In this document: piece after piece, positions 26,644 through 50,280 of the stretch
Position numbering within the stretch: the first letter of the stretch is position 1
How the letters are laid out: each line of letters opens with the position of its first letter
IMG/VR virus record: IMGVR_UViG_3300046003_007892
Location: 1 to 64,000 of that record
Direction: 5' to 3' (one strand)
DNA length: 64,000 nt
Notes under the pieces: generated by a model
Told to the model about the DNA's origin: nothing
The model's database searches: none
Seen by the model: only the letters and a program-made list of their open reading frames with translations
Made by a program: the position numbers and the translations under genes

Positions 26644-26719
26644 TGGCGTCCCGAGCAGGGCTCGAACCTGCGACCTCATCCTTCGGAGGGATGTGCTCTT
26701 CCAACTGAGCTACCGGGAC
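26644..26719 (-). tRNA. tRNA-Arg(CCG)
   Basis: Cloverleaf, loop CTCCGAA, CCA encoded. Confidence 0.92.
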
Positions 26720-26743
26720 TTGAGGCGTCACCCTCGAAAAGAA

Positions 26744-26819
26744 TGGATGGGGCGGTAGGGGTCGAACCCACAACCGACGCATTCAAAGTGCGTTGCTCTA
26801 CCAGTTAAGCTACGCCCCA
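26744..26819 (-). tRNA. tRNA-Gln(TTG)
   Basis: loop CTTTGAA, U1-A72, CCA encoded. Confidence 0.92.
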
Positions 26820-26843
26820 CCAGGGGTGGTCCTGAGCACTTTG

Positions 26844-26916
26844 CTGGGGAGATAGGTCTCGAACCTATAACCGCCCGATTCAGAGTCGGGTGCTCCACCA
26901 GTTAAGCTACTCCCCA
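26844..26916 (-). tRNA. tRNA-Gln(CTG), no encoded CCA
   Basis: loop CTCTGAA, U1-A72; 17-bp flanking inverted repeat. Confidence 0.9.
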
Positions 26917-26937
26917 GCAAAATGCTCAGGACCGAAA

Positions 26938-27012
26938 TGGCGATCACGACGGGTTTCGAACCCGTGGCCTGCGCATCGACAGTGCGCTGCTCTACCCCTG
27001 AGCTACGTGACC
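26938..27012 (-). tRNA. tRNA-Asp(GTC)
   Basis: loop CTGTCGA, CCA encoded. Confidence 0.9.
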
Positions 27013-27013
27013 G

Positions 27014-27089
27014 TGGCGACCTTGACGAGGTTCGAACTCGCGACATTCGGATAGACAATCCGACGCTCTACCAGTTGAGCTACAAGGCC
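27014..27089 (-). tRNA. tRNA-Asp(GTC)
   Basis: loop TTGTCTA (U37), CCA encoded. Confidence 0.88.
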
Positions 27090-27116
27090 GTCGTAGATGA
27101 AGAACAATGTCCTTTG

Positions 27117-27190
27117 CTGGGATGGAGGGATTCGAACCCCCGACCCTCGGTTTCGTAGACCGATGCTCTAATCCGCTGAGCTACACCCCA
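27117..27190 (-). tRNA. tRNA-Arg(ACG), no encoded CCA
   Basis: loop CTACGAA; 12-bp flanking inverted repeat. Confidence 0.9.
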
Positions 27191-27215
27191 GCAAAGGACA
27201 TTCCTCTTTTAGTAA

Positions 27216-27291
27216 TGGCGTAGCTAGGAGGGCTCGAACCTCCAACCTTCAGATTCGTAATCTGATGCTCTTCCAGTTGAGCTATAGCTAC
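27216..27291 (-). tRNA. tRNA-Arg(ACG)
   Basis: loop TTACGAA, CCA encoded. Confidence 0.92.
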
Positions 27292-27406: not shown

Positions 27407-27442
27407 AAAGAAAAACCCGCCCCGGCCTGAGCCGAAGCGGGT
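27407..27442 (-). terminator. Intrinsic terminator (attenuator) upstream of tRNA array 1
   Basis: ACCCGC-TTCGGC-TCAG-GCCGGG-GCGGGT followed by TTTTCTTT. Confidence 0.8.
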
Positions 27443-27479
27443 GTTTCTAATCCTGTAGACCTAGACCGAGGATTTGGCC

Positions 27480-27587
27480 TTAGCAGCCGCCTCCTTGATC
27501 ACCATTGTCCACACGACGAGAAACCCCGCAACCGCGTTGGCGGTCCCGTTGCTGTCGATCTCGGCGTTGGTTGATGGTGTAGGTCAT
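27480..27587 (-). CDS. Leader peptide of tRNA array 1 (35 aa, MTYTINQRRDRQQRDRQRGCGVSRRVDNGDQGGGC)
   Basis: 8 nt after TATAAATA; 12 consecutive Gln/Arg/Asp codons matching array tRNAs; antiterminator pairing. Confidence 0.8.
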   Translation of the reverse strand: MTYTINQRRDRQQRDRQRGCGVSRRVDNGDQGGGC

Positions 27588-27595
27588 GATGTAAC

Positions 27596-27603
27596 TATTT
27601 ATA
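27596..27603 (-). promoter_or_regulatory. Late promoter TATAAATA (full T4 consensus)
   Basis: Exact match, drives leader 1. Confidence 0.7.
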
Positions 27604-27622
27604 CAGATGGTTCGAAAAGACG

Positions 27623-27940
27623 TCAATAAGAAAATTTCTGCCGGGCGATTTTTCTGCGGCGAAGTATGGCGTGGGCCTCGACGGGGTGCGGAAACGCTGG
27701 CATCCCTTCCCTTCTCACAAATCGAATCTTTCCTTCGGGGGTCAGGTAGAAAAAGTTCGCGCCGCCACGCCTGACAAGTGCAGCCTCGGTCAACTTTTTC
27801 AATGCAGCAAGGATAGTCTCGGCAGTCAGACGATGTTTCCCCAACGCGTCGATTACCTTCTTCAACTCTCCTACGGACGTGGCTCTCGAATCATGAAGTG
27901 CGTGCCCGACAATACGCTGATTTTTTGATAGCTTAATCAT
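27623..27940 (-). CDS. Small basic winged-helix-like protein
   Basis: ILAALKKLTEAALV...FYLTPEG. Confidence 0.5.
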   Translation of the reverse strand: MIKLSKNQRIVGHALHDSRATSVGELKKVIDALGKHRLTAETILAALKKLTEAALVRRGGANFFYLTPEGKIRFVRREGMPAFPHPVEAHAILRRRKIARQKFSY

Positions 27941-39628: not shown

Positions 39629-40125
39629 CCAACGGCCAAATAGGTTGCTAGGCCTTTTTCGCGTGCTTGGTCAAAAATAGGTCCTGCTTCGAACGTGATC
39701 TTCAAACAATGCAAACGTGTCGTTTCAATGATTACGTCATGAAACTCCGTCTTGAACATGCCGAATATTTCACCATCAATAGAGACAATAATGTCAACCT
39801 TGTTGAGACGCTCTGAAGAGTATCCCCAATGACTCCCTATACTGAAGGACAAGTGAAATTCTGATATTTCTTCATTATCGAACTTCTCTATGGCTTCCGA
39901 TATCATCAGGTCATTTGGATACCCATTTTCGTCGGACAGATAAAGTCCTGGGAATATCAACGTGATTTCTTTGGATGTCACGCCTAGATAGCGGTCTACT
40001 TCCTGAGTAGGCTTGGTAGTGTTATCCAAACCAATGGCGGCTCCTGGCCTGTATACAGTGGGAGCGGGTAGCTTCGGGTCGAGCTTGGAAATAAGTCTCG
40101 TAAGAAAAGCATCTTCGAGCGTCAA
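39625..40125 (-). CDS. AT-rich hypothetical protein
   Basis: TTGA overlap with HNH stop; 22/60 GC at 39841-39900. Confidence 0.55.
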   Translation of the reverse strand: MTLEDAFLTRLISKLDPKLPAPTVYRPGAAIGLDNTTKPTQEVDRYLGVTSKEITLIFPGLYLSDENGYPNDLMISEAIEKFDNEEISEFHLSFSIGSHWGYSSERLNKVDIIVSIDGEIFGMFKTEFHDVIIETTRLHCLKITFEAGPIFDQAREKGLATYLAVG

Positions 40126-40667
40126 TGAGAAATCTTCTTCCATCTTTTTTTCACGGCCACGTCAGAGCAGCCGAGCATCTCAGCTATCTTAACCATGGAG
40201 AGACGAGACATCAAATTAGGAAGATCGACCGAGTCCCAGTCCACCTTGCCTTTTCGCTGCCCGGCACACGCGACGGAACATGTGATCTGGTGGGCGGGTT
40301 TGGGCCCGGAGCAAATCGGGCACGGCACCGGCTCTTCGGCGTAGAGGGATTTGTAGTCGGCGAACCTCTCGTCGAATGACGGAGGATTCTCCGGTACGTC
40401 CAATATGCCGTCGTGAACTTCCCGGTGGCAGTTCGCGCAGAGGAGAACGCATTTCTTCAACTCGGCCACGATCTTCGGCCAGGACGCTGGATTCCTCCGC
40501 ACCGTTCCCAACGCGAAATCCTTGGCGGTTGGGTCCAGGTGGTGCAGTTCCAATGCAGATACTGTTCGATCATATGAGCAGATCGCACAGCATCCACCCA
40601 TGGCCTCGACGATGCGTTCTTTGGTGCGGCGTCGCCAACTCTTTACCGCTTCTGAGCCTTTGGACAA
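40122..40667 (-). CDS. HNH endonuclease (free-standing) with C-terminal Zn-finger/HTH
   Basis: GGCCAIC...LELHHLDP...KCVLLCANCHREVH; GGAGGT SD before TTG; TAAATA 40701-40706. Confidence 0.85.
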   Translation of the reverse strand: MSKGSEAVKSWRRRTKERIVEAMGGCCAICSYDRTVSALELHHLDPTAKDFALGTVRRNPASWPKIVAELKKCVLLCANCHREVHDGILDVPENPPSFDERFADYKSLYAEEPVPCPICSGPKPAHQITCSVACAGQRKGKVDWDSVDLPNLMSRLSMVKIAEMLGCSDVAVKKRWKKISH

Positions 40668-40740
40668 GAAAAATACCTCCGAGCCGAAGTGGCCCAAAGG
40701 TATTTATCTTCGTGTAATCAAACCTATGACGGTTCGAGAA

Positions 40741-40829
40741 TGGCTCCTAGTTGAGGAATCGAACCTCACTCGTTAGCCTCGCGGCCTACAGGGTAACAAC
40801 CTGCCCGCACACCTTGTGCGTTACTAGGA
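40741..40829 (-). tRNA. tRNA-Asn(GTT) with atypical long variable arm
   Basis: loop TTGTTAC, U1-A72, GGCC-GCGA-GGCT variable hairpin, CCA encoded. Confidence 0.75.
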
Positions 40830-40861
40830 ATAGCGATGCCCCGAAAGGCATCAGAGATAAG

Positions 40862-41173
40862 CTGGGCAGGCAGGGCTCGAACCTGCGACATTTCGATTCG
40901 CTTGTTCCCATGTTCCCATGGGCGCGGACTATATCTTCACCCTCAGCATTACCTGTTAGGGGCTGGGTGCTGTTTGGTCGTTATCGGGTTTGGCTCCCTC
41001 AGACCTAGTCTCTACACCTTCCGAAATACTCAAGGCCTTCTTTCGGCTCGGCTCGGGATTGCCACCGCCATTACGCGAGAGGTTTCCCCGAATTCTCCCA
41101 GATTTTCAACCTCAGTTTCCCGAGGAAGTGTCCATTGAACAGTCGAACGCTCTACCAACTGAGCTACAACCCA
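40862..41173 (-). tRNA. tRNA-Asn(GTT) split by group I intron (exons 41138-41173, 40862-40898), no CCA
   Basis: Exons join to a canonical 73-nt cloverleaf with loop CT-GTT-AA. Confidence 0.9.
40899..41137 (-). mobile_element. Group I intron, 239 nt, no ORF
   Basis: P GAATTCGGGGAAAC, Q AATCCCGAGC, R GTAGAGACTA, S AAGATATAGTCC; P1 with U.G at 5' splice site; terminal G. Confidence 0.92.
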
Positions 41174-41326
41174 GCTTATCTCTGACTTGGCGTCCCCCCT
41201 CCCGCCATCACCTGTTGGTGTCTGCGCGGTCGGAGGAACATGGTTGCCCCCGACCATGAGAAACCTTGCTCTCATGGTCGGGAGGGTTTTCTTGCCCTCC
41301 CCCGTAAAGGGGGTCCGGCACGAAGA

Positions 41327-41557
41327 TTAAACGTCGGTCGCCTTCCTGTGATTCTTGAAATCGCGTCCGCGTTCCTGAATGACGGTTGCGTCGAGTTCGG
41401 TTCCGAAGGCCTCAAGGACCGTCCAACCTCGGCTCCACTTGCCGTCTTCCTTGAGATCAACGAGGCCGTCCTGGATGGCCCGTTCAGACGGAATCCAGGA
41501 GACTTGACGTGCGCCGTTGCGCTCCAGTGTGCATTGTTTTACAGTCTCCCTTCTCAT
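41327..41557 (-). CDS. Small hypothetical protein within tRNA array
   Basis: AAGGA SD, 76 aa. Confidence 0.55.
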   Translation of the reverse strand: MRRETVKQCTLERNGARQVSWIPSERAIQDGLVDLKEDGKWSRGWTVLEAFGTELDATVIQERGRDFKNHRKATDV

Positions 41558-41601
41558 CTGATAGTCCTTTCGTAAGACTTCACCACCATGGTGAAGAATA
41601 G

Positions 41602-41676
41602 TGGAGGCGCAGGGTGGTCTCGAACCACCGACATGCAGAATATGAATCTGCCGCTCTACCCCTGAGCTACTGCGCC
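41602..41676 (-). tRNA. tRNA-Met(CAT), probably elongator (Ile2 not excluded)
   Basis: loop TTCATAT, G1-C72, CCA encoded. Confidence 0.85.
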
Positions 41677-41729
41677 GTATTCCTTTTGCTGCCGCCCCAG
41701 CATCGAAACACTGGGACGGCGGCGAAACT

Positions 41730-41893
41730 TGGTGGACGTGCCAGGAATCGAACCCGGACAGTTGAGTTTCACCCCAACCGCATTACCCGGACGGACCCCG
41801 CCTCTGACTGTCTCCGGGTTCGCGACCCCTCGGACATCCTCGGACGAGGCACTCCGCCTCTATCAAACTCAACGGGTATCCCCGTCTACGCCC
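41730..41893 (-). ncRNA. 164-nt tRNA/tmRNA-like RNA with Ala identity (G3.U70, A73, CCA)
   Basis: GGGCGT/ACGTCC-A-CCA acceptor, T-arm CCGGG-TTCGATT-CCTGG, 8-bp stem enclosing ~95-nt insert. Confidence 0.6.
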
Positions 41894-41898
41894 GTAAA

Positions 41899-41974
41899 TG
41901 GTAGGCCCGGACGGGTTCGAACCGCCGACATTCGGTGTGTAAAACCGACGCTCTCCCAACTGAGCTACAGGCCC
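41899..41974 (-). tRNA. tRNA-Val(TAC)
   Basis: loop TTTACAC, CCA encoded. Confidence 0.92.
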
Positions 41975-42087
41975 TCAGGTCACCCTGAAAATCTCCCAGT
42001 GATTACCCCACCGCTTGGTCGGCAACCTCCGCCGCTGGGAGCGGCCTCTCTGACTGTCGCCATCCTGGCGCCGGTCGTATTCTTGTG

Positions 42088-42164
42088 TGGTCGGCGAAGG
42101 TGGGTTCGAACCACCGACCTTTCGATTATCGGTCGAATGCTCTAACCAACTGAGCTACTCGCCG
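42088..42164 (-). tRNA. tRNA-Ile(GAT)
   Basis: loop CCGATAA (C33), CCA encoded. Confidence 0.88.
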
Positions 42165-42205
42165 TCACACAAACTGAGCTTTGATGCTCCTGACCTCGCC
42201 ACGTC

Positions 42206-42270
42206 TGGCTGTCCGGCGAGGGTTTCGAACCCTCCGCGCCTTGCCTGTCGGCCACCTAGGGACCAGACAG
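42206..42270 (-). ncRNA. 65-nt tRNA mimic lacking an anticodon arm
   Basis: 9-bp CTGTCTGGT/GCCGGACAG stem, T-arm GAGGG-TTCGAAA-CCCTC, CCA. Confidence 0.5.
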
Positions 42271-42345
42271 TCAGGAACATCTCTGCTAAGAACCCTTCCG
42301 CTTCTTCCCTCGCAGCTTACGAGGGCGTCCCCTTGGGATTCGAAA

Positions 42346-42410
42346 TGGCGGGGCGCCCGGATTTGACCCGGAGATCGTTCGCTTCAAGCGGGGCATCGCA
42401 ACCTAGCCCC
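42346..42410 (-). pseudogene. Degenerate tRNA-like element
   Basis: CCA end, T-arm with GTCAAAT loop, truncated D-arm, weak stem around TGA. Confidence 0.4.
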
Positions 42411-42452
42411 TAAGCTTGTGACCTTCCCCCTACGGGGCACACACCGATGAAA

Positions 42453-42527
42453 TGGTAGTCGAGGGTGGGATTGAACCACCGACCTTCGCCTTATCAAGAC
42501 GCTGCTCTCCCGCTGAGCTACTCGACC
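42453..42527 (-). tRNA. tRNA-Ile(GAT)
   Basis: loop TTGATAA, CCA encoded. Confidence 0.88.
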
Positions 42528-42532
42528 GCACG

Positions 42533-42607
42533 TGGTAGGTCTGGAGGGTTTCGCACCCCCGACCTTTGCAATGTCAATGCAACGCTCTCCTCCTGAGCTA
42601 CAGACCC
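42533..42607 (-). tRNA. tRNA-Val(GAC)
   Basis: loop TTGACAT, T-loop TGCGAAA, CCA encoded. Confidence 0.88.
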
Positions 42608-42702
42608 ATACCACATGGAAACTATCCCCCGACGACCCACAGTGCAGGCCGTCTATTCAAGACCCCGAGGGATGGGGTCCCGGAAGCGCGAGGCTTCCGA
42701 AA

Positions 42703-42777
42703 TGGTGGCCACAGGTGGTCTCGAACCACCGACACCCGCATTTTCAGTGCGGTGCTCTACCCCTGAGCTACATGGCC
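42703..42777 (-). tRNA. tRNA-Phe(GAA)
   Basis: loop CTGAAAA, CCA encoded. Confidence 0.92.
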
Positions 42778-42779
42778 GT

Positions 42780-43070
42780 AGACATAATCCTGGTCACCCT
42801 TACCGCTCACCATTGGGCCTCCACCTGGGGGCTTCAACGCCAAGCCGGGGGATTGAACCCCGACAGATCATGTCCGTATCGGAACACGCCAACAGACCAC
42901 CAGCGAAGAAGGGATTCGAACCCTTCTGCCTCCCCCTTCGCCACCGTTACTGCCGAAACAGCCAAGGCATCGAACCTTGTCGGGTTTGGGTGCGCCGTGC
43001 AACGCTCTTGGTCAGTTCAAGGCCTTTGGACCGCCTGTAGGCGATCTGTTGGCGAGTTCCGATAGTCTTC
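42780..43070 (-). ncRNA. Structured RNA candidate between tRNA-Tyr and tRNA-Phe
   Basis: 22-bp stem (43043-43064 with 42877-42898) enclosing two T-loop hairpins; third T-loop hairpin 42846-42862. Confidence 0.55.
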
Positions 43071-43082
43071 ATATGTATTCAC

Positions 43083-43166
43083 TGGTCGGCAGAGTAGGAT
43101 TCGAACCTACGCGCCTTTCAGAGCGGGGTTACAGTCCGCCGGTTTCAACCACTCACCCATCTGCCG
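43083..43166 (-). tRNA. tRNA-Tyr(GTA)
   Basis: loop CTGTAAC, long variable arm, CCA encoded. Confidence 0.9.
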
Positions 43167-43187
43167 ATAAGTGAATACATACTGCGT

Positions 43188-43262
43188 TGGCAGGAGAGGA
43201 GGGATTTGAACCCCCGACCTTCGGTTTTGGAGACCGCTGCTCTACCACTGAGCTACACTCCT
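43188..43262 (-). tRNA. tRNA-Trp(CCA)
   Basis: loop CTCCAAA, CCA encoded. Confidence 0.92.
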
Positions 43263-43320
43263 ATGTCAACGCATCGTCTTCGTCTTGTTCTTTCGTTCTG
43301 TTCTCCGTTTCGATGACTGC

Positions 43321-43349
43321 AACCTAGTCGAGGTGTTTGGGGCAGTCAA
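43321..43349 (-). promoter_or_regulatory. Sigma70-like promoter directly ahead of tRNA array 2
   Basis: TTGACT-N17-TAGGTT. Confidence 0.55.
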
Positions 43350-43512
43350 CAACTTTTTTCGATTTTGTTGAATATTTTCGAGGACTTACTCAACTGTACT
43401 CAACGTATACTTCGTGCGTTCTTCGCCTTTACTTGGCGGATACTTGCTGGTTCTTTGTGACTTCAAACTGCCAAGGCATTTGTTGTCGGGGTCCCTGTTG
43501 GGTTTCGGCCAT

Positions 43513-43548
43513 AGAAAAAGGCCGCTCCGGTTTTCCGGGGCGGCCTTT
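43513..43548 (-). terminator. Intrinsic terminator (attenuator) upstream of tRNA array 2
   Basis: AAAGGCCGCCCCGG-AAAA-CCGGAGCGGCC-TTTTTCT. Confidence 0.85.
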
Positions 43549-43572
43549 GTATCTCTGGAGCGGGGTGGGTGT

Positions 43573-43668
43573 TTAGATCGACACCCCATCACGTCCATGC
43601 ACAAAAGCCGCGCCCGGAATATTCCAGACGACGTTGTTGTTCACAAACATGATATAGTTCTTGCTCAT
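43573..43668 (-). CDS. Leader peptide of tRNA array 2 (31 aa, MSKNYIMFVNNNVVWNIPGAAFVHGRDGVSI)
   Basis: 6 nt after TAAATA; 14 consecutive codons for N/Y/I/M/F/V/W matching array tRNAs; 17-bp antiterminator. Confidence 0.85.
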   Translation of the reverse strand: MSKNYIMFVNNNVVWNIPGAAFVHGRDGVSI

Positions 43669-43674
43669 CACTCT

Positions 43675-43680
43675 TATTTA
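43675..43680 (-). promoter_or_regulatory. Late promoter TAAATA
   Basis: GCTAAATA, drives leader 2. Confidence 0.65.
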
Positions 43681-43703
43681 GCAAACTGGCTCGCGGCAGT
43701 CAA

Positions 43704-44216
43704 TTAAAAACGTCCAAAATCGTAATTTTCTTGCGATTTCATATATCTGGCTGCGCTGATGGCCTCTCTGGTGCCGGAATAGGTGTAGGTCCCCCGTCTG
43801 GTCACGAAGCTGAGTTGGCGTTCGAACGACGAGGGGTCGATGGTGTATTGCGGAATGATCATGACGTAGGGACAGACCTGGAAACCCACGCCAAGCATCA
43901 GGTTGTAGTCTCGCTTAAGTTCGGCCCCGAGTTCGTAGACCATGTTGCGAAGGATGTCGTAGTCGTATTCGGGCCGGTTCCGTCGCGGTCCAAGGAGATC
44001 GTAGTCGATGCTAAACCGGCAAGCGAGAGGTCTTGTGCACGCCTCGATGACTGAGCGGCGCACGTTCTTGACGGGCGCGGTCATGATGAAGTCGGCATGC
44101 GGGACGAGTTCGGGATAAACGTCGAGGACGCCGAGGGTGAGTTCGCGAGCCAGTTTGACCAGATAGGGGTCGTGGTTAGCGATTTGATCACAGTTCTGAA
44201 CTAGCTGGTGCTGCAT
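43704..44216 (-). CDS. Miniature T4 gp23/gp24-like capsid protein paralog (170 aa)
   Basis: IANHDPYLVKLAR; ELGAELKRD; CPY...IDPSSFERQLSFVTRRG recall gp23 N-arm, spine helix and C-terminus. Confidence 0.5.
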   Translation of the reverse strand: MQHQLVQNCDQIANHDPYLVKLARELTLGVLDVYPELVPHADFIMTAPVKNVRRSVIEACTRPLACRFSIDYDLLGPRRNRPEYDYDILRNMVYELGAELKRDYNLMLGVGFQVCPYVMIIPQYTIDPSSFERQLSFVTRRGTYTYSGTREAISAARYMKSQENYDFGRF

Positions 44217-45481: not shown

Positions 45482-45781
45482 TTAGGCGGCCCGGCGACGG
45501 CCCTGCATCAGATTGTGCTTGGGCGCGAAGGCGGTGTGGTCTCGGCGCGGGAGACCGAGGCGGTCGGCCTTCCCCAAGACGGCGTTCTTGGTGCAGCCCA
45601 ATTTCTTGCCGATATCGATGGCCAGGAGGTCGGCAGCCCAGAGATCGCGAAGACGTTGGACCCGCTCGGGGTTCCAGAACTTCGCCGCCTCCCTCGCCGC
45701 CAGCTTGACCGCCCGCTCGGCGAGAATGACATCCCAGTCAACGATCTTTTCAACGAAGCGACCGTTCTCACGCTGCTGCAA
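45482..45781 (-). CDS. gcrA: GcrA-like cell-cycle regulator (N-terminal DNA-binding domain)
   Basis: WNPERVQRLRDLW...IGKKLGCTKNAVLGKADRLGL. Confidence 0.85.
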   Translation of the reverse strand: MQQRENGRFVEKIVDWDVILAERAVKLAAREAAKFWNPERVQRLRDLWAADLLAIDIGKKLGCTKNAVLGKADRLGLPRRDHTAFAPKHNLMQGRRRAA

Positions 45782-47342: not shown

Positions 47343-47670
47343 CGCAAACCCGGCCCTCAAGGGTTATCGAGACCTCACGGGCGACGGGCGCATCCTCCTG
47401 GTCTTCAATGACCATCTGTGCCCGATCACGCCCAAATACCGGGCTGAGATCGTGCTGGAATACAACGCCGCCGACGCCGAGCCATGGTTGCGGATAACGA
47501 AGAACCGGTACGGCAAGGACGACATCTTCGCGTATCTGCGCGACCTCGGCTTTGAGGTATCGAAGAGCATCCTCCATCTTGACGATTTCGGCATCGGTCA
47601 CATCAAATATTCCGAGGCCATGTTGATGGCCCTCGTCATGTATTCACCATCTGAAGAAGAAATAAGTTGA
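47314..47670 (+). CDS. Hypothetical protein
   Basis: 3' part of track ORF 46951-47670; start uncertain. Confidence 0.5.
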   Translation: MSLSSIVSHNANPALKGYRDLTGDGRILLVFNDHLCPITPKYRAEIVLEYNAADAEPWLRITKNRYGKDDIFAYLRDLGFEVSKSILHLDDFGIGHIKYSEAMLMALVMYSPSEEEIS

Positions 47671-47696
47671 CGGAAGCCTTGCCGTCCTGCTAAATA
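47667..47696 (+). promoter_or_regulatory. Hybrid promoter of NAD operon (TTGACG..GCTAAATA)
   Basis: -35 hexamer plus a -10 that is also the late TAAATA box. Confidence 0.55.
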
Positions 47697-47752: not shown

Positions 47753-48904
47753 ATGGCACCGAACACCAGCGCATCGCCCGCGCACGACCTCGCCGTTTTC
47801 ATTGGCAGGTTCCAGCCGTTTCATAACGGCCACCTTCACGTCATTCTTCAGGCCCTCCTGTTCGCCCGTTACGTGCTGATCGTCATCGGCTCGCACGACA
47901 TGGCGCGTCGGCCTGATCACCTTCCCTTCACCAGCGACGAACGTCGTGACATGATTCTCGCGGGCATCCCCGCCGAGTTCCACGACCGCATCCGCTTCGC
48001 CTACGCGGAAGACTTCGGCAACATGACGATGTGGACCAGCAACGTCCGCCGCATGGCCGAGGTAGTCCTGGCCGAGACCGCCTTCCCCAAAGACGTCAAC
48101 GACTGCTCGGTCACCCTGATCGGGCACAAGAAGGACAACTCGTCCTTCTATCTGTCGGCCTTCCAAGACTGGGAGACCATCGACGTCGCCAACCACGAGA
48201 ACCTGTCCGCGACGCCGATGCGTGAGAAATATCTCAACGCCGACGAGGGCGAAGTCGCCGAGTTCTTCCGAGACGCCGCCATGATGATGCCCAAGGGCAC
48301 CGTGGACTGGCTCAAGGCCTTCATGGTCTCGCGCTACTATCGCGAGATGGTCGCCGAATGGCAGTTCATGAAGGACTACCTGCGCCCCTACCTCGCGCTG
48401 CCGTATCCGCCCAAGTTCGTCACCGTGGACAACGTCGTCATCTTTGGCGACAAGGTTCTGCTGGTCCTCCGCAAGGGCTACCCGTGCAAGGGCCTGTGGG
48501 CTCTGCCGGGCGGCCACCTCAACGACGACGAGAACGTCATCACGGGCTGCCTGCGGGAACTCAAGGAAGAGACCAAGCTGAAGGTCCCCGAGGCCATCCT
48601 GCGCGGCAGCATCATCGGCGAGCCCAAGGTCTACGACAATCCCTACCGGTCGATGCGGAAGCGGACCATCACGCACGCCGTCCTGGTCCACATCGTTCCG
48701 AAGATTCCGACGCGCCAGGATGGCACGCTGGAAACCGACCCGGACAAGATCAGGGCCGCTCTGGCGCCGCCGAAGATCAAGGCGTCGGACGACGCCAAGA
48801 AGGCCCAGTGGGTTCCCCTGCACGAGATCAAGCGCAGTGAACTCATGGAAGACCACTGGCAAATCATCCAAGAGATGCGCCAGCGCATCCCGGCAGACAA
48901 GTAA
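47753..48904 (+). CDS. nadM: Bifunctional NMN/NaMN adenylyltransferase - Nudix ADP-ribose pyrophosphatase
   Basis: IGRFQPFHNGH; WALPGG..DENVITGCLRELKEET Nudix box. Confidence 0.93.
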   Translation: MAPNTSASPAHDLAVFIGRFQPFHNGHLHVILQALLFARYVLIVIGSHDMARRPDHLPFTSDERRDMILAGIPAEFHDRIRFAYAEDFGNMTMWTSNVRRMAEVVLAETAFPKDVNDCSVTLIGHKKDNSSFYLSAFQDWETIDVANHENLSATPMREKYLNADEGEVAEFFRDAAMMMPKGTVDWLKAFMVSRYYREMVAEWQFMKDYLRPYLALPYPPKFVTVDNVVIFGDKVLLVLRKGYPCKGLWALPGGHLNDDENVITGCLRELKEETKLKVPEAILRGSIIGEPKVYDNPYRSMRKRTITHAVLVHIVPKIPTRQDGTLETDPDKIRAALAPPKIKASDDAKKAQWVPLHEIKRSELMEDHWQIIQEMRQRIPADK

Positions 48905-48915
48905 GGGCCCCGACC

Positions 48916-50280
48916 ATGATCAACTTCGATTTCGCCAAGCGGGCCTACGATCACAGCTTCAAGATCGACCCCATCATCCGGTTCCTGTCGGACACGGATT
49001 TCTACAAGCTGTTGATGCACCAGTTCATCTACCGGAACTTCTACAACACGACGGTGTCCTTCCAGGTCTTCAACCGGTCGGACTCCGTGCTGCTCGCGAC
49101 CGAGATCGACGAGGCCGAACTCCGCGCCCAACTCGACCACGTTCGCACCCTGAAATGGGAGCAAAACGAACTCAACTACCTGAAGGCCCAGGAGTTCTAC
49201 GGCAAGCGGGACCTGTTCTGCAACGCCTACCTGGACTACCTCCAACACAGCTTCAAGCTCAGCGACTACGATCTGGAGATGACCGCCAACGGTCAAATTC
49301 TGCTGACCTTCAAGGGCACGTGGGTCGAGGTCACCCTGTGGGAAATCTACGCGCTGGCGATCATCAACGAGATGCGCTACCGCCGCAAGATGGCCCTGAT
49401 GACCAAGATGGGTCTCGACGTCATGTATTCGCAGGCCAAGACCAAGGCCTACCGGAAGGCCAAGAAGCTCGCCCGTCTGGCCAACCTGAAGATCACCGAC
49501 TTCGGCACCCGTCGCCGTCACAGCCATCTCTGGCAGGAATACATCATCCTCCTCTACCGGGACATCCTCGGCGACCGCTTCATCGGCACGTCGAACGTCT
49601 ACTTCGCCATGAAGCACGGCCTGAACGCCATCGGGACCAACGCGCACGAGATGCCGATGGCCTACGCCGCCATGGCCGCCGCCCACGGTGGTTCGGACGA
49701 AGAAATCCGGGAGGCTCAATACAAGTTCCTCCGGGATTGGGCGGCCGATTATCGCGGCGGTCTTCAGGTCTTCCTTCCCGACACCTTCGGCACCACCCAG
49801 TTCCTCAAGGGCGCCCCGCTCTGGCTGAAGGAATGGCGCGGTGGTCGCCCGGATTCCAAGAAACCCATTCCGGGCGGCGAGGAACTGATCGCCTACTGGA
49901 AGGAACACGACGAGGCCATCGAAGAGAAGCTGATCGTTTTCGCTGACGGCCTCGACGTCCGCATCGACGGCTTCGAGCCCAACGGCGAAGACATCACGGC
50001 CATCTATGAACACTTCGAGCCCACGGGCGTCGGCCACACCTACGGTCTGGGCACGATGGGGACCTGTGACTTCCTCGGCTGTCACCCCGACGATACCGAC
50101 GACGTCCAGATCATGAAGCCGATCTCGCTCGTCTGCAAACTCAGCGAAGTTGAAGATGTCCCGGCTGTCAAGCTGTCGGACAACTACAAGAAAGCGACGA
50201 GCGCGAGCCCCGAAGAGGTCGCCCGCTATCGTGCGATCTTTGGTCACGAGGGGATGGAGAACATCCCCGTCCAGGTCTAG
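48916..50280 (+). CDS. pncB: Nicotinate phosphoribosyltransferase
   Basis: DTDFYKLLMHQ, DFGTRRRHS, GTNAHE, PDTFGT, RPDS, AVKLSDN..KATS. Confidence 0.93.
   Translation: MINFDFAKRAYDHSFKIDPIIRFLSDTDFYKLLMHQFIYRNFYNTTVSFQVFNRSDSVLLATEIDEAELRAQLDHVRTLKWEQNELNYLKAQEFYGKRDLFCNAYLDYLQHSFKLSDYDLEMTANGQILLTFKGTWVEVTLWEIYALAIINEMRYRRKMALMTKMGLDVMYSQAKTKAYRKAKKLARLANLKITDFGTRRRHSHLWQEYIILLYRDILGDRFIGTSNVYFAMKHGLNAIGTNAHEMPMAYAAMAAAHGGSDEEIREAQYKFLRDWAADYRGGLQVFLPDTFGTTQFLKGAPLWLKEWRGGRPDSKKPIPGGEELIAYWKEHDEAIEEKLIVFADGLDVRIDGFEPNGEDITAIYEHFEPTGVGHTYGLGTMGTCDFLGCHPDDTDDVQIMKPISLVCKLSEVEDVPAVKLSDNYKKATSASPEEVARYRAIFGHEGMENIPVQV

What the first reader, a model, noticed from the sequence alone, without database searches (positions are those of the whole stretch)
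43513..43680. tRNA-sensing attenuator 2: leader peptide spells out the amino acids of its tRNA array (N,Y,I,M,F,V,W)
Seen (minus strand): late promoter TAAATA (43675-80), ATG 6 nt later, 31-codon ORF MSK-NYIMFVNNNVVWNI-PGAAFVHGRDGVSI, then an intrinsic terminator (43513-48), then the tRNA array at 43262-40741. The 14 consecutive codons AAC TAT ATC ATG TTT GTG AAC AAC AAC GTC GTC TGG AAT ATT (43618-59) use all seven and only the seven amino acids of the array tRNAs (Trp, Tyr, Phe, Val GAC+TAC, Ile x2, Met, Asn x2), including both Val codon classes. Immediately after the run, CCGGG(C)GCGGCTTTTGTG (43600-17) pairs over 17 bp (one bulge) with TACAAAGGCCGCCCCGG (43535-51), the terminator 5' arm. 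The Val-Val-Trp codons can instead pair with that segment (protector). Known: this 1:2/2:3/3:4 layout is ribosome-mediated attenuation as in his/trp/thr/ilv/leu operons, where it controls biosynthetic enzymes. Inference: here it controls tRNA genes, so stalling caused by depleted, uncharged or nuclease-cleaved host tRNAs would switch on the replacement tRNAs, a feedback counter to anticodon-nuclease defences. I am not aware of this being described for tRNA arrays.
Basis: partly seen in the sequence, partly recalled or inferred. Interest (0 to 1): 0.98.

Follow-up and report, generated by a model that had tools for sequence, protein, structure and literature searches.

The report
Leader-peptide attenuators controlling phage tRNA arrays
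A giant phage puts a tiny gene in front of each of two tRNA gene clusters, written only in the codons those tRNAs read and followed by a switchable stop signal, so it probably makes extra tRNAs only when decoding of those codons falters. I found no earlier description of this kind of control for tRNA genes.

Summary
On the minus strand there is a promoter, a start codon 6 nt later and a 31-codon ORF. Its 14-codon run uses exactly the seven amino acids, and all eight anticodon classes, of the array downstream. A strong intrinsic terminator and an 18-bp antiterminator follow.

This is far beyond chance. The run is the longest of its kind in all six frames of the window (14 against 8). A second array in the window (Arg, Asp, Gln) has the same module, with a 12-codon Gln/Arg/Asp run (next longest 7).

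Folding with a ribosome footprint placed codon by codon flips terminator to antiterminator exactly over the control codons in the array-2 leader. In the array-1 leader the change falls where the run ends.

The TAAATA-then-ATG layout is this phage's usual leaderless gene start (14 of 23 sites).

An unrelated phage family (L030 and relatives) has a conserved leader using exactly the ten amino acids of its downstream tRNAs.

Best reading: ribosome-mediated attenuation giving demand-driven feedback on tRNA supply. All evidence is computational. No transcript data or close relatives exist. The anti-nuclease purpose is inference. Two smaller arrays lack clear attenuators.

Verdict: a new variant of a known mechanism, of high interest.

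The parts
43698..43703 (-). -35-like hexamer TTGACT of the array-2 leader promoter, 17 nt upstream of TAAATA
   Evidence: The same TTGACn-17-TA(T)AAATA layout heads all four tRNA arrays of the phage.
43675..43681 (-). CTAAATA promoter element, like the T4 and Rak2-like late-promoter motif
   Evidence: 14 of 23 TAAATA sites in the window are followed at 4-5 nt by the ATG of a long ORF. PMC5259590 reports ATAAATA as the predicted late promoter of the Rak2-like phage CBB.
43573..43668 (-). leader ORF 2: 31 codons plus stop, probably leaderless (ATG 6 nt after TAAATA). An alternative GTG start lies at 43671.
   Evidence: Public gene callers also call it as a 31-aa gene.
43618..43659 (-). control-codon run of 14 codons (NYIMFVNNNVVWNI), all decodable by the array-2 tRNAs and covering all 8 anticodon classes
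43587..43654 (-). 1:2 protector hairpin: the control codons pair with region 2
   Evidence: -30.8 kcal/mol
43599..43619 (-). region 2, the 5' strand of the antiterminator
   Evidence: duplex -32.2 kcal/mol, z -6.6, 0 of 500 shuffles
43534..43552 (-). region 3, the 3' strand of the antiterminator, which is also the 5' arm of the terminator
43513..43548 (-). intrinsic terminator 2: GC stem 43545-43520, loop AAAA, U-tract 43519-43513
   Evidence: -24.0 kcal/mol
43321..43349 (-). second promoter-like site (TTGACT, 17 nt, TAGGTT) between the terminator and tRNA-Trp. It is a possible attenuator-independent entry point.
   Evidence: It shares the exact 9-mer TTGACTGCC with the leader promoter. Its function is untested.
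40741..43262 (-). tRNA array 2: Trp, Tyr, Phe, Val(GAC), Ile, Ile, Val(TAC), Met(CAT), intron-split Asn(GTT), and an 89-nt Asn(GTT)-like gene
40671..40705 (-). terminator-like hairpin closing the array-2 transcription unit
27596..27626 (-). array-1 promoter: TTGACG, 17 nt, TATAAATA
27480..27587 (-). leader ORF 1: 35 codons plus stop, with the ATG 8 nt after TATAAATA
27534..27569 (-). control-codon run 1 of 12 codons (QRRDRQQRDRQR). All Arg codons are CGN, and all five anticodon classes of array 1 are covered.
27507..27529 (-). region 2 of attenuator 1
27437..27460 (-). region 3 of attenuator 1. It overlaps the 5' arm of the terminator.
   Evidence: duplex -40.2 kcal/mol, z -6.7, 0 of 500 shuffles
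27409..27448 (-). intrinsic terminator 1: GC stem 27441-27416 plus a U-tract
   Evidence: -28.5 kcal/mol
26644..27291 (-). tRNA array 1: Arg(ACG) x2, Asp(GTC) x2, Gln(CTG), Gln(TTG), Arg(CCG)

Best explanation
These are ribosome-mediated (leader-peptide) transcription attenuators placed in front of tRNA gene arrays of a Rak2-like jumbo phage.

Proposed mechanism:
1. Transcription starts a few nucleotides after the TAAATA element, so the leader mRNA is leaderless or nearly so and is translated at once.
2. If every codon of the control run is decoded promptly, the ribosome moves onto region 2 while the polymerase makes regions 3 and 4. The terminator then forms and the tRNA array is not transcribed from this promoter.
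3. If the ribosome stalls anywhere in the run, region 1 is masked and region 2 is free. A stall would follow if any one of the cognate aminoacyl-tRNAs is scarce because it is depleted, uncharged or cleaved.
4. The free region 2 pairs with region 3 to form the antiterminator, and the polymerase reads through into the array.

Because the run holds at least one codon for every tRNA species in the array, the leader acts as an OR gate over the whole set. Because the products are the very tRNAs being sensed, the loop is negative feedback that keeps decoding capacity topped up during infection.

Shown here by computation: the anatomy, its statistical non-randomness, the three alternative structures, the footprint-dependent switch, and the replication of the design.

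Inferred: that the ORF is translated, that stalling drives read-through in vivo, and why the phage needs this control.
For: 1. Codon-to-tRNA match.
- Array 2: all 14 codons of the run fall in the array's set, and 8 of 8 anticodon classes are covered.
- Array 1: all 12 codons fall in the set, 5 of 5 classes are covered, and all Arg codons are CGN, matching the ACG and CCG anticodons.

2. Statistics.
- Each run is the longest of its kind in six frames of 64 kb: 14 against 8, and 12 against 7.
- Expected numbers in the upstream region are 5e-8 and 2e-6 by locus composition.
- Against 1.76 Mb of other phage DNA, the rate is about 1 per million codon positions.
- About 30 tRNA arrays from other NadM-carrying phage contigs show nothing comparable, apart from the L030 family. 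The single tRNAs of CBB and a tRNA pair in Atu_ph07 also have no convincing leader.

3. Structures.
- Leader-region folding z-scores are -5.7 and -5.2.
- Antiterminator duplex z-scores are -6.6 and -6.7, with 0 of 500 shuffles as good.
- Energies in kcal/mol: 1:2 hairpins -30.8 and -28.6; 2:3 domains -50.2 and -48.3; terminators -24.0 and -28.5.

4. Ribosome-footprint model.
- Array-2 leader: terminator probability is about 0 with the A site at codons 3-14, 0.31 at codon 15, and 0.98 from codon 17.
- In transcripts cut before the terminator's 3' arm, that arm's partner is sequestered while the ribosome sits on the control run. It is freed once the ribosome covers region 2. The boundary is at codon 15-18 in leader 2 and codon 18 in leader 1, which is the end of each run.

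5. Start context.
- TAAATA followed at 4-5 nt by ATG heads 14 of 23 sites, including structural genes and the neighbouring 406-aa gene.
- All four arrays carry TTGACn-17-TA(T)AAATA followed by an ATG at 5-8 nt.

6. Independent lineage. In ten contigs of a phage family with 44% G+C, a leader with a Shine-Dalgarno site has an 11-codon run (TCMIKTERFYH).
- The run uses exactly the ten amino acids of the tRNAs downstream. It uses none of those unique to the tRNAs upstream of the leader.
- It is identical at the nucleotide level except for one change, while the flanks vary.
- It is followed by a terminator with compensatory changes.

7. Genome context. The phage also encodes CysRS, another class I aminoacyl-tRNA synthetase, a T4 Rnl1-like RNA ligase, peptidyl-tRNA hydrolase, IF3, ribosomal protein S21 and a release-factor-like gene.
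Against: - No transcript data. No RNA run holds this phage, and laying reads was uninformative.
- No diverged relatives of this phage exist in the collections, so covariation of leader and array cannot be tested within the lineage.
- Neither leader has a Shine-Dalgarno sequence, so translation rests on the leaderless argument.
- At equilibrium, attenuator 1 switches only partly. In an out-of-frame run, footprints over the control region lowered terminator probability to 0.45-0.7.
- A promoter-like site downstream of terminator 2 could make array 2 partly independent of the attenuator.
- Arrays 3 (Arg-UCU, CAU) and 4 (Lys x4) have the same promoter and a mini-ORF with only 2-3 cognate codons. 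Neither has a U-tract terminator.
- In the L030 family no strong antiterminator was found.
- In that family, gain or loss of single tRNAs is not mirrored in the leader: Val in L031, Met missing in L115.
- Most amino acids have only one or two codons in leader 2, so sensitivity to a single scarce tRNA may be low.
Confidence: 0.78

Rival explanations
1. A general translation sensor or timer, not a codon-specific one. The leader only reports whether ribosomes are translating at all, for example during host shut-off or late infection. Any slowdown gives read-through, and the codon choice is secondary.
For: The structural switch depends only on ribosome position. Most amino acids have a single codon in leader 2, so a specific response may be weak. 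All arrays share one promoter type, which suggests common timing.
Against: This does not explain why two leaders in one genome, and a third in an unrelated family, use exactly the amino acids of their own downstream tRNAs and cover all of them.
Confidence: 0.1
2. An ordinary terminator of the upstream gene plus a chance ORF. The hairpins end transcription of the 170-aa and 105-aa genes, and the small ORFs are not translated.
For: Both modules lie directly after protein genes (ends at 43704 and 27623). There is no Shine-Dalgarno sequence.
Against: - Each module has its own promoter between the gene end and the ORF.
- Run statistics give 5e-8 and 2e-6.
- The antiterminator duplexes were matched by 0 of 500 shuffles.
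- The switch boundary coincides with the end of the run in both leaders.
Confidence: 0.02
3. Amino-acid starvation control of the classical kind. The leaders sense charging, meaning amino-acid supply, rather than the amount or integrity of tRNA. The phage raises tRNA gene expression under starvation for reasons unrelated to defence.
For: Leader-peptide attenuators respond to aminoacyl-tRNA and cannot tell low charging from low tRNA. This is established for trp and his, from general knowledge. The anatomy is the same.
Against: More tRNA does not relieve amino-acid shortage, so as the main purpose this gives no benefit. The product-equals-sensed-molecule loop fits control of tRNA amount better. 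This differs from the best explanation in purpose, not in mechanism.
Confidence: 0.07
4. Direct RNA-tRNA sensing without a ribosome. The codon run would bind the anticodons of free tRNAs, like a multi-specifier T-box or a tRNA sponge.
For: The run displays one codon per tRNA species.
Against: - No T-box or any other Rfam family matches the leaders.
- The run is in frame with a start codon placed as in real genes of the phage.
- Three-base contacts without a T-box scaffold are too weak.
- The codons lie buried in the 1:2 hairpin.
Confidence: 0.02

Closest known systems
Leader-peptide attenuators of amino-acid operons in enterobacteria (trp, his, pheA, leu, thr, ilvGMEDA, ilvBN)
   Same: A promoter-proximal short ORF with a run of control codons. 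Mutually exclusive 1:2, 2:3 and 3:4 structures. An intrinsic terminator. Stalling at the control codons favours the antiterminator. Multi-amino-acid leaders also exist (thr: Thr and Ile; ilv: Leu, Val and Ile). These points are from general knowledge; the layout was tested here.
   Different: The regulated genes are tRNAs, not biosynthetic enzymes. The run covers seven (or three) amino acids, with about one codon per tRNA species rather than many codons of one kind. The start is leaderless and has no Shine-Dalgarno sequence. The element is in a phage.
pheST attenuator (phenylalanyl-tRNA synthetase) of E. coli
   Same: A leader peptide with cognate codons controls a component of the translation apparatus that raises the supply of the sensed aminoacyl-tRNA (general knowledge).
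   Different: It controls a synthetase, senses one amino acid, and is a cellular gene.
T-box riboswitches
   Same: They sense tRNA status and control transcription termination through an antiterminator/terminator choice.
   Different: T-boxes bind uncharged tRNA directly, without a ribosome. They have a conserved specifier loop and a T-box sequence. No Rfam match was found here, and the element here is an ORF.
trpL attenuator of Sinorhizobium meliloti (rnTrpL / peTrpL)
   Same: Ribosome-mediated attenuation operating in an alphaproteobacterium, the likely host group of this phage (PMC6614838, listed).
   Different: It controls trpE(G). Its leader has Trp codons only, and it is not leaderless.
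Phage tRNAs as counter-defence (T5 tRNA-Lys against PARIS; T5 tRNA-Tyr against retron PtuAB; anticodon-loop variants)
   Same: Phage tRNA genes replace host tRNAs that defence nucleases cleave (PMC11464382, PMC11555353, PMC10264068). This gives a reason to sense tRNA shortage.
   Different: PMC10264068 has no mention of attenuation, leader, terminator or promoter, and the full-text searches that listed the other two found no paper on attenuation of tRNA genes. They do not appear to describe any control of phage tRNA transcription.
Leader upstream of the tRNA cluster in the L030 phage family
   Same: Promoter, short ORF whose 11-codon run uses exactly the ten amino acids of the downstream tRNAs, then an intrinsic terminator directly before the first tRNA.
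   Different: It has a Shine-Dalgarno site and a 5' UTR. It is unrelated in sequence, and no strong antiterminator was found.

Membership tests
Ribosome-mediated (leader-peptide) transcription attenuator | Short ORF directly downstream of a promoter and upstream of the regulated genes | tested here: met
   ORFs of 31 and 35 codons begin 6 and 8 nt after the TAAATA/TATAAATA elements.
Ribosome-mediated (leader-peptide) transcription attenuator | The leader ORF is translated (usable initiation signal) | tested here: inconclusive
   There is no Shine-Dalgarno sequence. However, the TAAATA-N4-5-ATG layout heads 14 of 23 sites, including long genes, which argues for leaderless initiation. There are no ribosome or proteome data.
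Ribosome-mediated (leader-peptide) transcription attenuator | Cluster of control codons tied to the regulated function | tested here: met
   Runs of 14 and 12 codons match the downstream tRNA sets exactly. Each is the longest such run in the window, with E of 5e-8 and 2e-6.
Ribosome-mediated (leader-peptide) transcription attenuator | Intrinsic terminator between the leader and the regulated genes | tested here: met
   GC-rich hairpins with U-tracts at 43548-43513 and 27448-27409, at -24.0 and -28.5 kcal/mol.
Ribosome-mediated (leader-peptide) transcription attenuator | Antiterminator (2:3) mutually exclusive with the terminator | tested here: met
   Duplexes of -32.2 and -40.2 kcal/mol overlap the 5' arm of the terminator. 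z = -6.6 and -6.7, with 0 of 500 shuffles as good.
Ribosome-mediated (leader-peptide) transcription attenuator | Anti-antiterminator (1:2) that includes the control codons | tested here: met
   Hairpins at 43654-43587 and about 27570-27509, at -30.8 and -28.6 kcal/mol.
Ribosome-mediated (leader-peptide) transcription attenuator | A stall at the control codons favours read-through; a ribosome beyond them favours termination | tested here: met
   In-silico footprint model only. The array-2 leader switches fully. In the truncated-transcript model, both leaders change state at the end of the run. The array-1 leader switches only partly at equilibrium.
Ribosome-mediated (leader-peptide) transcription attenuator | Read-through in vivo depends on leader translation and on the level of cognate aminoacyl-tRNA | not testable with these tools
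   No RNA data for this phage. Reporter and Term-seq experiments are needed.
T-box riboswitch | Conserved stem I with specifier loop, plus the T-box sequence in the antiterminator bulge | tested here: not met
   No Rfam match at the gathering threshold or at E up to 1 in 40600-43800.
T4-type late promoter (TATAAATA) | Match to TATAAATA about 6-8 nt before the transcript start, recurring before late genes, with a gp55-type sigma in the genome | tested here: inconclusive
   The array-1 leader has an exact TATAAATA and the array-2 leader has CTAAATA. The motif recurs before genes, including a tail lysozyme-like gene. Rak2-like phage CBB is reported to have the same motif. No gp55 homologue was identified in the stretches read, and a -35 TTGAC is also present.
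Sigma-70-type promoter | TTGACA-like -35 and TATAAT-like -10 hexamers, 16-18 nt apart | tested here: inconclusive
   TTGACT and TTGACG sit at exactly 17 nt. The -10 is TATAAA (5 of 6) for array 1 but TAAATA (3 of 6) for array 2. The consensus scan did not call either.

The most novel reading that the evidence does not exclude
Phages have evolved, at least twice independently, 'pangram' leader peptides that list one codon for every tRNA of a downstream array. With these they measure, codon by codon, whether the infected cell can still decode, and they switch on replacement tRNAs on demand. This would be an inducible counter-measure to host tRNA decay and to tRNA-cleaving immune systems. It would also be the first case of ribosome-mediated attenuation whose regulated product is the sensed tRNA itself.
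Probability: 0.45. Interest if true: 0.95.

Novelty: new variant of a known kind. Interest (0 to 1): 0.88.

Why it matters
Why phages carry tRNA genes is a question about fifty years old. Current answers are codon compensation, replacement of a decaying host pool, and escape from anticodon nucleases. None of them says how phage tRNA expression is controlled.

A leader that reads out decoding capacity for exactly the codons served by the downstream tRNAs would be a direct, testable link between tRNA demand and tRNA supply.

It would extend classical attenuation from enzymes to the tRNAs themselves, giving a closed autoregulatory loop.

It would also give a compact natural sensor for the availability of many tRNAs at once, and a sequence signature (the leader codon set equals the array tRNA set) that can be searched for in all phage genomes.

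Finding a second, unrelated family with the same signature suggests the principle is not a one-off.

Tried and rejected
Searches for relatives of this phage:
- Near-identical DNA search in GenBank phages found only tRNA-Trp fragments of roseophages.
- Flanking proteins have no useful relatives. The 170-aa ORF finds only itself. The 406-aa protein shares only a mobile domain, and a contig carrying that domain (L005) has no tRNAs nearby.
- A tRNA-Trp pattern and a promoter-leader pattern in IMG/VR returned only this phage or unrelated T4-like genes.
- All public copies of the phage are identical in the leader, so there is no variation to read.

Distant relatives:
- Atu_ph07 has a Met-Leu tRNA pair without a leader.
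- The 50-kb Phosso stretch I read has no tRNAs.
- CBB has single tRNAs between small ORFs and no convincing leaders. The only hints are KKKK before its tRNA-Lys and a Met-rich stretch before a tRNA-Met, neither significant after multiple testing.

Walking the contig to 128.7 kb and 9 kb to the left:
- I found two more arrays, Arg(UCU)+CAU and Lys x4. Both have the same promoter and mini-ORFs but no clear terminator, so I did not count them as attenuators.
- No leader was found before the phage's CysRS or its other synthetase.

RNA evidence:
- One run search gave only a weak wastewater lead. Laying its contigs showed mostly tRNA-like matches from other organisms. Two earlier attempts failed.

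Screen of other arrays:
- The first screen missed the L030 leader because it split that array.
- In the second screen, which used merged arrays and a coverage statistic, the candidates in L058, L044 and L059 were inspected and rejected. They lie inside a long ORF or lack a start and a terminator.
- A possible leader for the upstream half of the L030-family cluster (MVSVGNN...) was too weak to claim.

Literature:
- Six full-text searches and one paper check found no description of attenuation of tRNA genes.
Full report
**What is there**

On the minus strand the sequence reads, in order:
- the end of a 170-aa ORF (stop at 43704);
- TTGACT (43703-43698), then 17 nt, then TAAATA (43680-43675), then six bases;
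- ATG at 43668 and a 31-codon ORF with its stop at 43575-43573;
- a GC-rich hairpin with a U-tract (43548-43513);
- about 250 nt of spacer, then tRNA-Trp at 43262.

ARAGORN and Rfam give the array as Trp, Tyr, Phe, Val(GAC), Ile, Ile, Val(TAC) and Met(CAT). With introns allowed, a further tRNA appears at 41173-40861. Read by eye, its anticodon loop is CUGUU / intron / AA. It is therefore tRNA-Asn(GUU) split by the group I intron that Rfam finds at 40906-41155. A last, odd 89-nt gene with a GUU anticodon and a long extra arm lies at 40829-40741.

Codons 4-17 of the ORF (43659-43618) use those seven amino acids and no others. Every anticodon class has at least one cognate codon in the run.

**Is it more than chance?**

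I translated the window in six frames and listed all runs built only from W, Y, F, V, I, M and N. The leader run is the longest, at 14; the next are 8.

The expected number of such a run in the 600 nt upstream of the array, from the window's own composition, is 5e-8.

It gives five runs of 14 or more in 3.5 million codon positions. None of them also covers all seven amino acids.

**A second copy of the design in the same window**

The title 'attenuator 2' made me look upstream of the other array (Arg-ACG x2, Asp x2, Gln-CUG, Gln-UUG, Arg-CCG; 27291-26644). It has the following parts:
- TTGACG, 17 nt, TATAAATA (27626-27596);
- an ATG 8 nt later (27587);
- a 35-codon ORF whose codons 7-18 read Q R R D R Q Q R D R Q R;
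- a strong terminator (27448-27409).

All six Arg codons are CGN, as the ACG and CCG anticodons require. Both Gln codons and both Asp codons occur. This run is again the longest of its kind in the window, 12 against 7, with E of 2e-6.

Two arrays with disjoint tRNA sets, each preceded by a leader written in its own set, is the strongest single argument that the match is functional.

**Structures**

Both leader regions fold far better than shuffles, with z of -5.7 and -5.2.

In leader 2 the minimum-energy fold has the 1:2 hairpin plus the terminator. The centroid fold has the 2:3 antiterminator.

The antiterminator duplexes were compared with 500 dinucleotide shuffles of the upstream sequence:

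| Leader | Pairing | Energy (kcal/mol) | z | Shuffles as good |
|---|---|---|---|---|
| 2 | 43619-43599 with 43552-43534 | -32.2 | -6.6 | 0 of 500 |
| 1 | 27529-27507 with 27460-27437 | -40.2 | -6.7 | 0 of 500 |

Folded alone, the elements score as follows:

| Element | Leader 2 (kcal/mol) | Leader 1 (kcal/mol) |
|---|---|---|
| 1:2 hairpin | -30.8 | -28.6 |
| 2:3 domain | -50.2 | -48.3 |
| Terminator | -24.0 | -28.5 |

**Does a ribosome on the control codons flip the switch?**

I forced a 28-nt footprint to be unpaired (A-site codon -15 to +12) and moved it codon by codon.

In leader 2 the terminator probability is:
- about 0 with the A site on codons 3-14;
- 0.31 on Trp-15;
- 0.69 on codon 16;
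- 0.98 from codon 17 onwards.

I then folded transcripts cut just before the 3' arm of the terminator, which mimics the moment of decision. The 5' arm is sequestered while the ribosome sits on the run. It is released once the ribosome covers region 2. The change falls at codon 15-18 in leader 2 and at codon 18 in leader 1, which is where each run ends.

At full-length equilibrium, leader 1 switches only partly. In an out-of-frame run, footprints over the control region lowered terminator probability to 0.45-0.7.

**Promoter and start**

TAAATA occurs 23 times in the window. At 14 sites an ATG that opens an ORF of 52-406 codons follows after 4-5 nt. These include the neighbouring 406-aa gene and a tail-lysozyme-like gene.

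This is evidently the phage's standard gene start, and it implies leaderless mRNAs. The leader ORFs fit it, with spacings of 6 and 8 nt.

The phage is a Rak2-like jumbo phage. Its baseplate wedge protein is 36-43% identical to those of Phosso, Atu_ph07, CBB and RaK2. For CBB, an ATAAATA motif before structural genes has been proposed as a T4-like late promoter (PMC5259590).

All four tRNA arrays, and the NAD-salvage operon at 47667, also carry a TTGAC -35 element at 17-18 nt. I therefore cannot say whether host sigma-70, a phage late factor, or both use these promoters.

**The rest of the phage**

The window is bases 1-64000 of a 240-kb IMG/VR contig. Identical copies occur in several samples. 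Walking to 128.7 kb found two more arrays on the same strand.

Array 3 (contig 64833-64682; Arg-UCU and a CAU tRNA):
- promoter TTGACC, 17 nt, TATAAATA;
- an 11-codon mini-ORF holding AGG, AGA and AUA;
- no U-tract terminator.

Array 4 (83311-82946; Lys-CUU x2 and Lys-UUU x2):
- promoter TTGACA, 17 nt, CTAAATA;
- a 13-codon mini-ORF with two AAA codons;
- only a weak hairpin.

I do not count either as an attenuator. They show that the long-leader design is not universal, even within this genome.

Further on, the phage encodes the following:
- CysRS and a second class I aminoacyl-tRNA synthetase;
- a T4 Rnl1-like RNA ligase;
- peptidyl-tRNA hydrolase;
- IF3 and ribosomal protein S21;
- a release-factor-like gene;
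- ClpXP and ClpS.

This is a genome heavily invested in translation and tRNA repair.

**Other phages**

No diverged relative of this phage could be found. As a control I used 79 IMG/VR loci anchored on the NadM gene.

Their roughly 30 tRNA arrays show no comparable upstream run, with one exception that I first missed. In L030 and L031 there is:
- a promoter-like site;
- a Shine-Dalgarno sequence;
- a 21-codon ORF whose codons 3-13 read T C M I K T E R F Y H;
- a terminator placed directly before tRNA-Cys.

The tRNAs downstream in L030 are C, M, Y, K, F, I, E, T, R and H, exactly those ten amino acids. This is the only run in the 21-kb locus that covers all ten. Only two or three such runs occur in 3.8 million null codon positions.

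A metagenome scan with a conserved 19-mer found eight more contigs of this family. In them:
- The tRNAs upstream of the leader (M, G, G, L, N, S, S, D, V) contribute none of their unique amino acids to the run.
- The run is identical at the nucleotide level in eight distinct sequences, apart from one G-to-A change, while the promoter spacer and the UTR vary.
- The middle hairpin and the terminator show compensatory changes.

The footprint model finds no strong antiterminator there. Single tRNA gains and losses are also not mirrored in the leader. The signature recurs, but the mechanism in that family is unresolved.

**Comparison with known systems**

The anatomy is that of the classical leader-peptide attenuators. 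Every defining sequence feature I could test is met (see the membership table). Translation of the leader and the in-vivo response could not be tested.

It is not a T-box.

It differs from the classical systems in four ways:
- The target is a set of tRNA genes, so the product is the molecule being sensed.
- The run lists many amino acids, roughly one codon per tRNA species.
- The start is leaderless.
- The setting is a phage.

Full-text searches found no description of attenuation of tRNA genes or arrays. A key paper on phage tRNAs as counter-defence does not mention transcriptional control.

Work showing that phage tRNAs rescue infection from PARIS, from retron effectors and from other anticodon nucleases (PMC11464382, PMC11555353, PMC10264068) gives a rationale for sensing tRNA shortage. 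It is not evidence for it.

**Verdict**

No experimental evidence exists.

I rate it a new variant of a known mechanism. My confidence is about 0.78 for ribosome-mediated, codon-specific attenuation. I am clearly less confident that defence evasion is its purpose.

Noticed in passing
window 40861-41173 (-); intron 40906-41155; HNH ORF 40122-40697 (-): tRNA-Asn(GUU) is interrupted in its anticodon loop by a group I intron (Rfam 50.1 bits, at the gathering score). An HNH homing-endonuclease gene lies just downstream of the array (PHROG E 3e-38).
   Followed up: partly
window 40741-40829 (-): An 89-nt tRNA-like gene with a GUU anticodon and a long extra arm. The tRNA model does not call it, and it has only a weak tRNA-Sec-model hit (25.5 bits). 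Its identity and function are unclear.
   Followed up: no
window, 23 TAAATA sites (for example 4716+, 20748-, 24387+, 31702-, 31718+, 35311+, 45484-): 14 of 23 TAAATA motifs are followed at 4-5 nt by the ATG of a long ORF. This phage of 58% G+C seems to start many genes as leaderless mRNAs directly from a T4-late-like promoter.
   Followed up: partly
L090 8650-8925 (contig 64682-64957, minus strand), just past the window's end: Array 3 holds Arg(UCU) and a CAU tRNA. Its promoter is TTGACC-17-TATAAATA, and an 11-codon mini-ORF ends AGG CUG AGA CGA AUA stop. The AUA codon raises the question whether the CAU tRNA is an Ile2 type. There is no U-tract terminator. A C-rich stretch lies before the tRNA.
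   Followed up: partly
L092 8850-9370 (contig 82946-83466, minus strand): Array 4 holds four tRNA-Lys genes (CUU x2, UUU x2). It follows TTGACA-17-CTAAATA and a 13-codon mini-ORF with two AAA codons. Its start (ACATCATGACC) is identical to that of leader 1, which suggests that the modules arose by duplication.
   Followed up: partly
L111 and L112 (contig 99-129 kb); L094 12504-13184: The phage encodes CysRS, a second class I aminoacyl-tRNA synthetase (519 aa), a T4 Rnl1-like RNA ligase, PTH2, IF3, ribosomal protein S21, ClpX, ClpP and ClpS. It also has a release-factor-like gene called as two pieces (33 and 183 aa).
   Followed up: no
window 43321-43349 (-): A second promoter-like site (TTGACT-17-TAGGTT) lies between terminator 2 and tRNA-Trp. 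It shares the exact 9-mer TTGACTGCC with the leader promoter.
   Followed up: partly
window 47667-47696 (+): A third TTGAC-N18-TAAATA promoter in the window sits about 55 nt before the NadM-like gene (47753-48904) and the NAPRTase gene (48916-50280). It is the same promoter type as the tRNA arrays but has a normal 5' UTR.
   Followed up: no
window 41677-41898, 42165-42452, 42778-43082, 41174-41601 (-): Array 2 has unusually long gaps between its tRNAs. At a relaxed threshold ARAGORN calls weak tRNA-like sequences at 42900-42982 (Val-AAC) and 41730-41803, which may be decayed tRNA genes.
   Followed up: no
L030 1222-1400; L031 209-391; L115-L125: An unrelated phage family (44% G+C, contigs of 130-170 kb) has a conserved 21-codon leader. 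Its run TCMIKTERFYH equals the amino-acid set of the tRNAs downstream. A terminator with compensatory changes follows.
   Followed up: yes
L122 about 2382-2417: In the same family, a mini-ORF (MVSVGNNCLEP) lies about 360 nt before the upstream half of the tRNA cluster (M G G L N S S D V). It covers six of those seven amino acids. It is too weak to call, and a 60-codon ORF lies between it and the tRNAs.
   Followed up: partly
L114 28561-28895 (Pectobacterium phage CBB): The small ORF directly before CBB's tRNA-Lys ends in KKKK, and the ORF before one tRNA-Met has 4 Met in 12 residues. Neither is significant after multiple testing, but both are worth a systematic look.
   Followed up: no
window 45482-45781 (-): A GcrA-like protein (Pfam PF07750 in the public gene call) points to an alphaproteobacterial host. 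So do the best NadM matches, which are to roseobacter phages.
   Followed up: no
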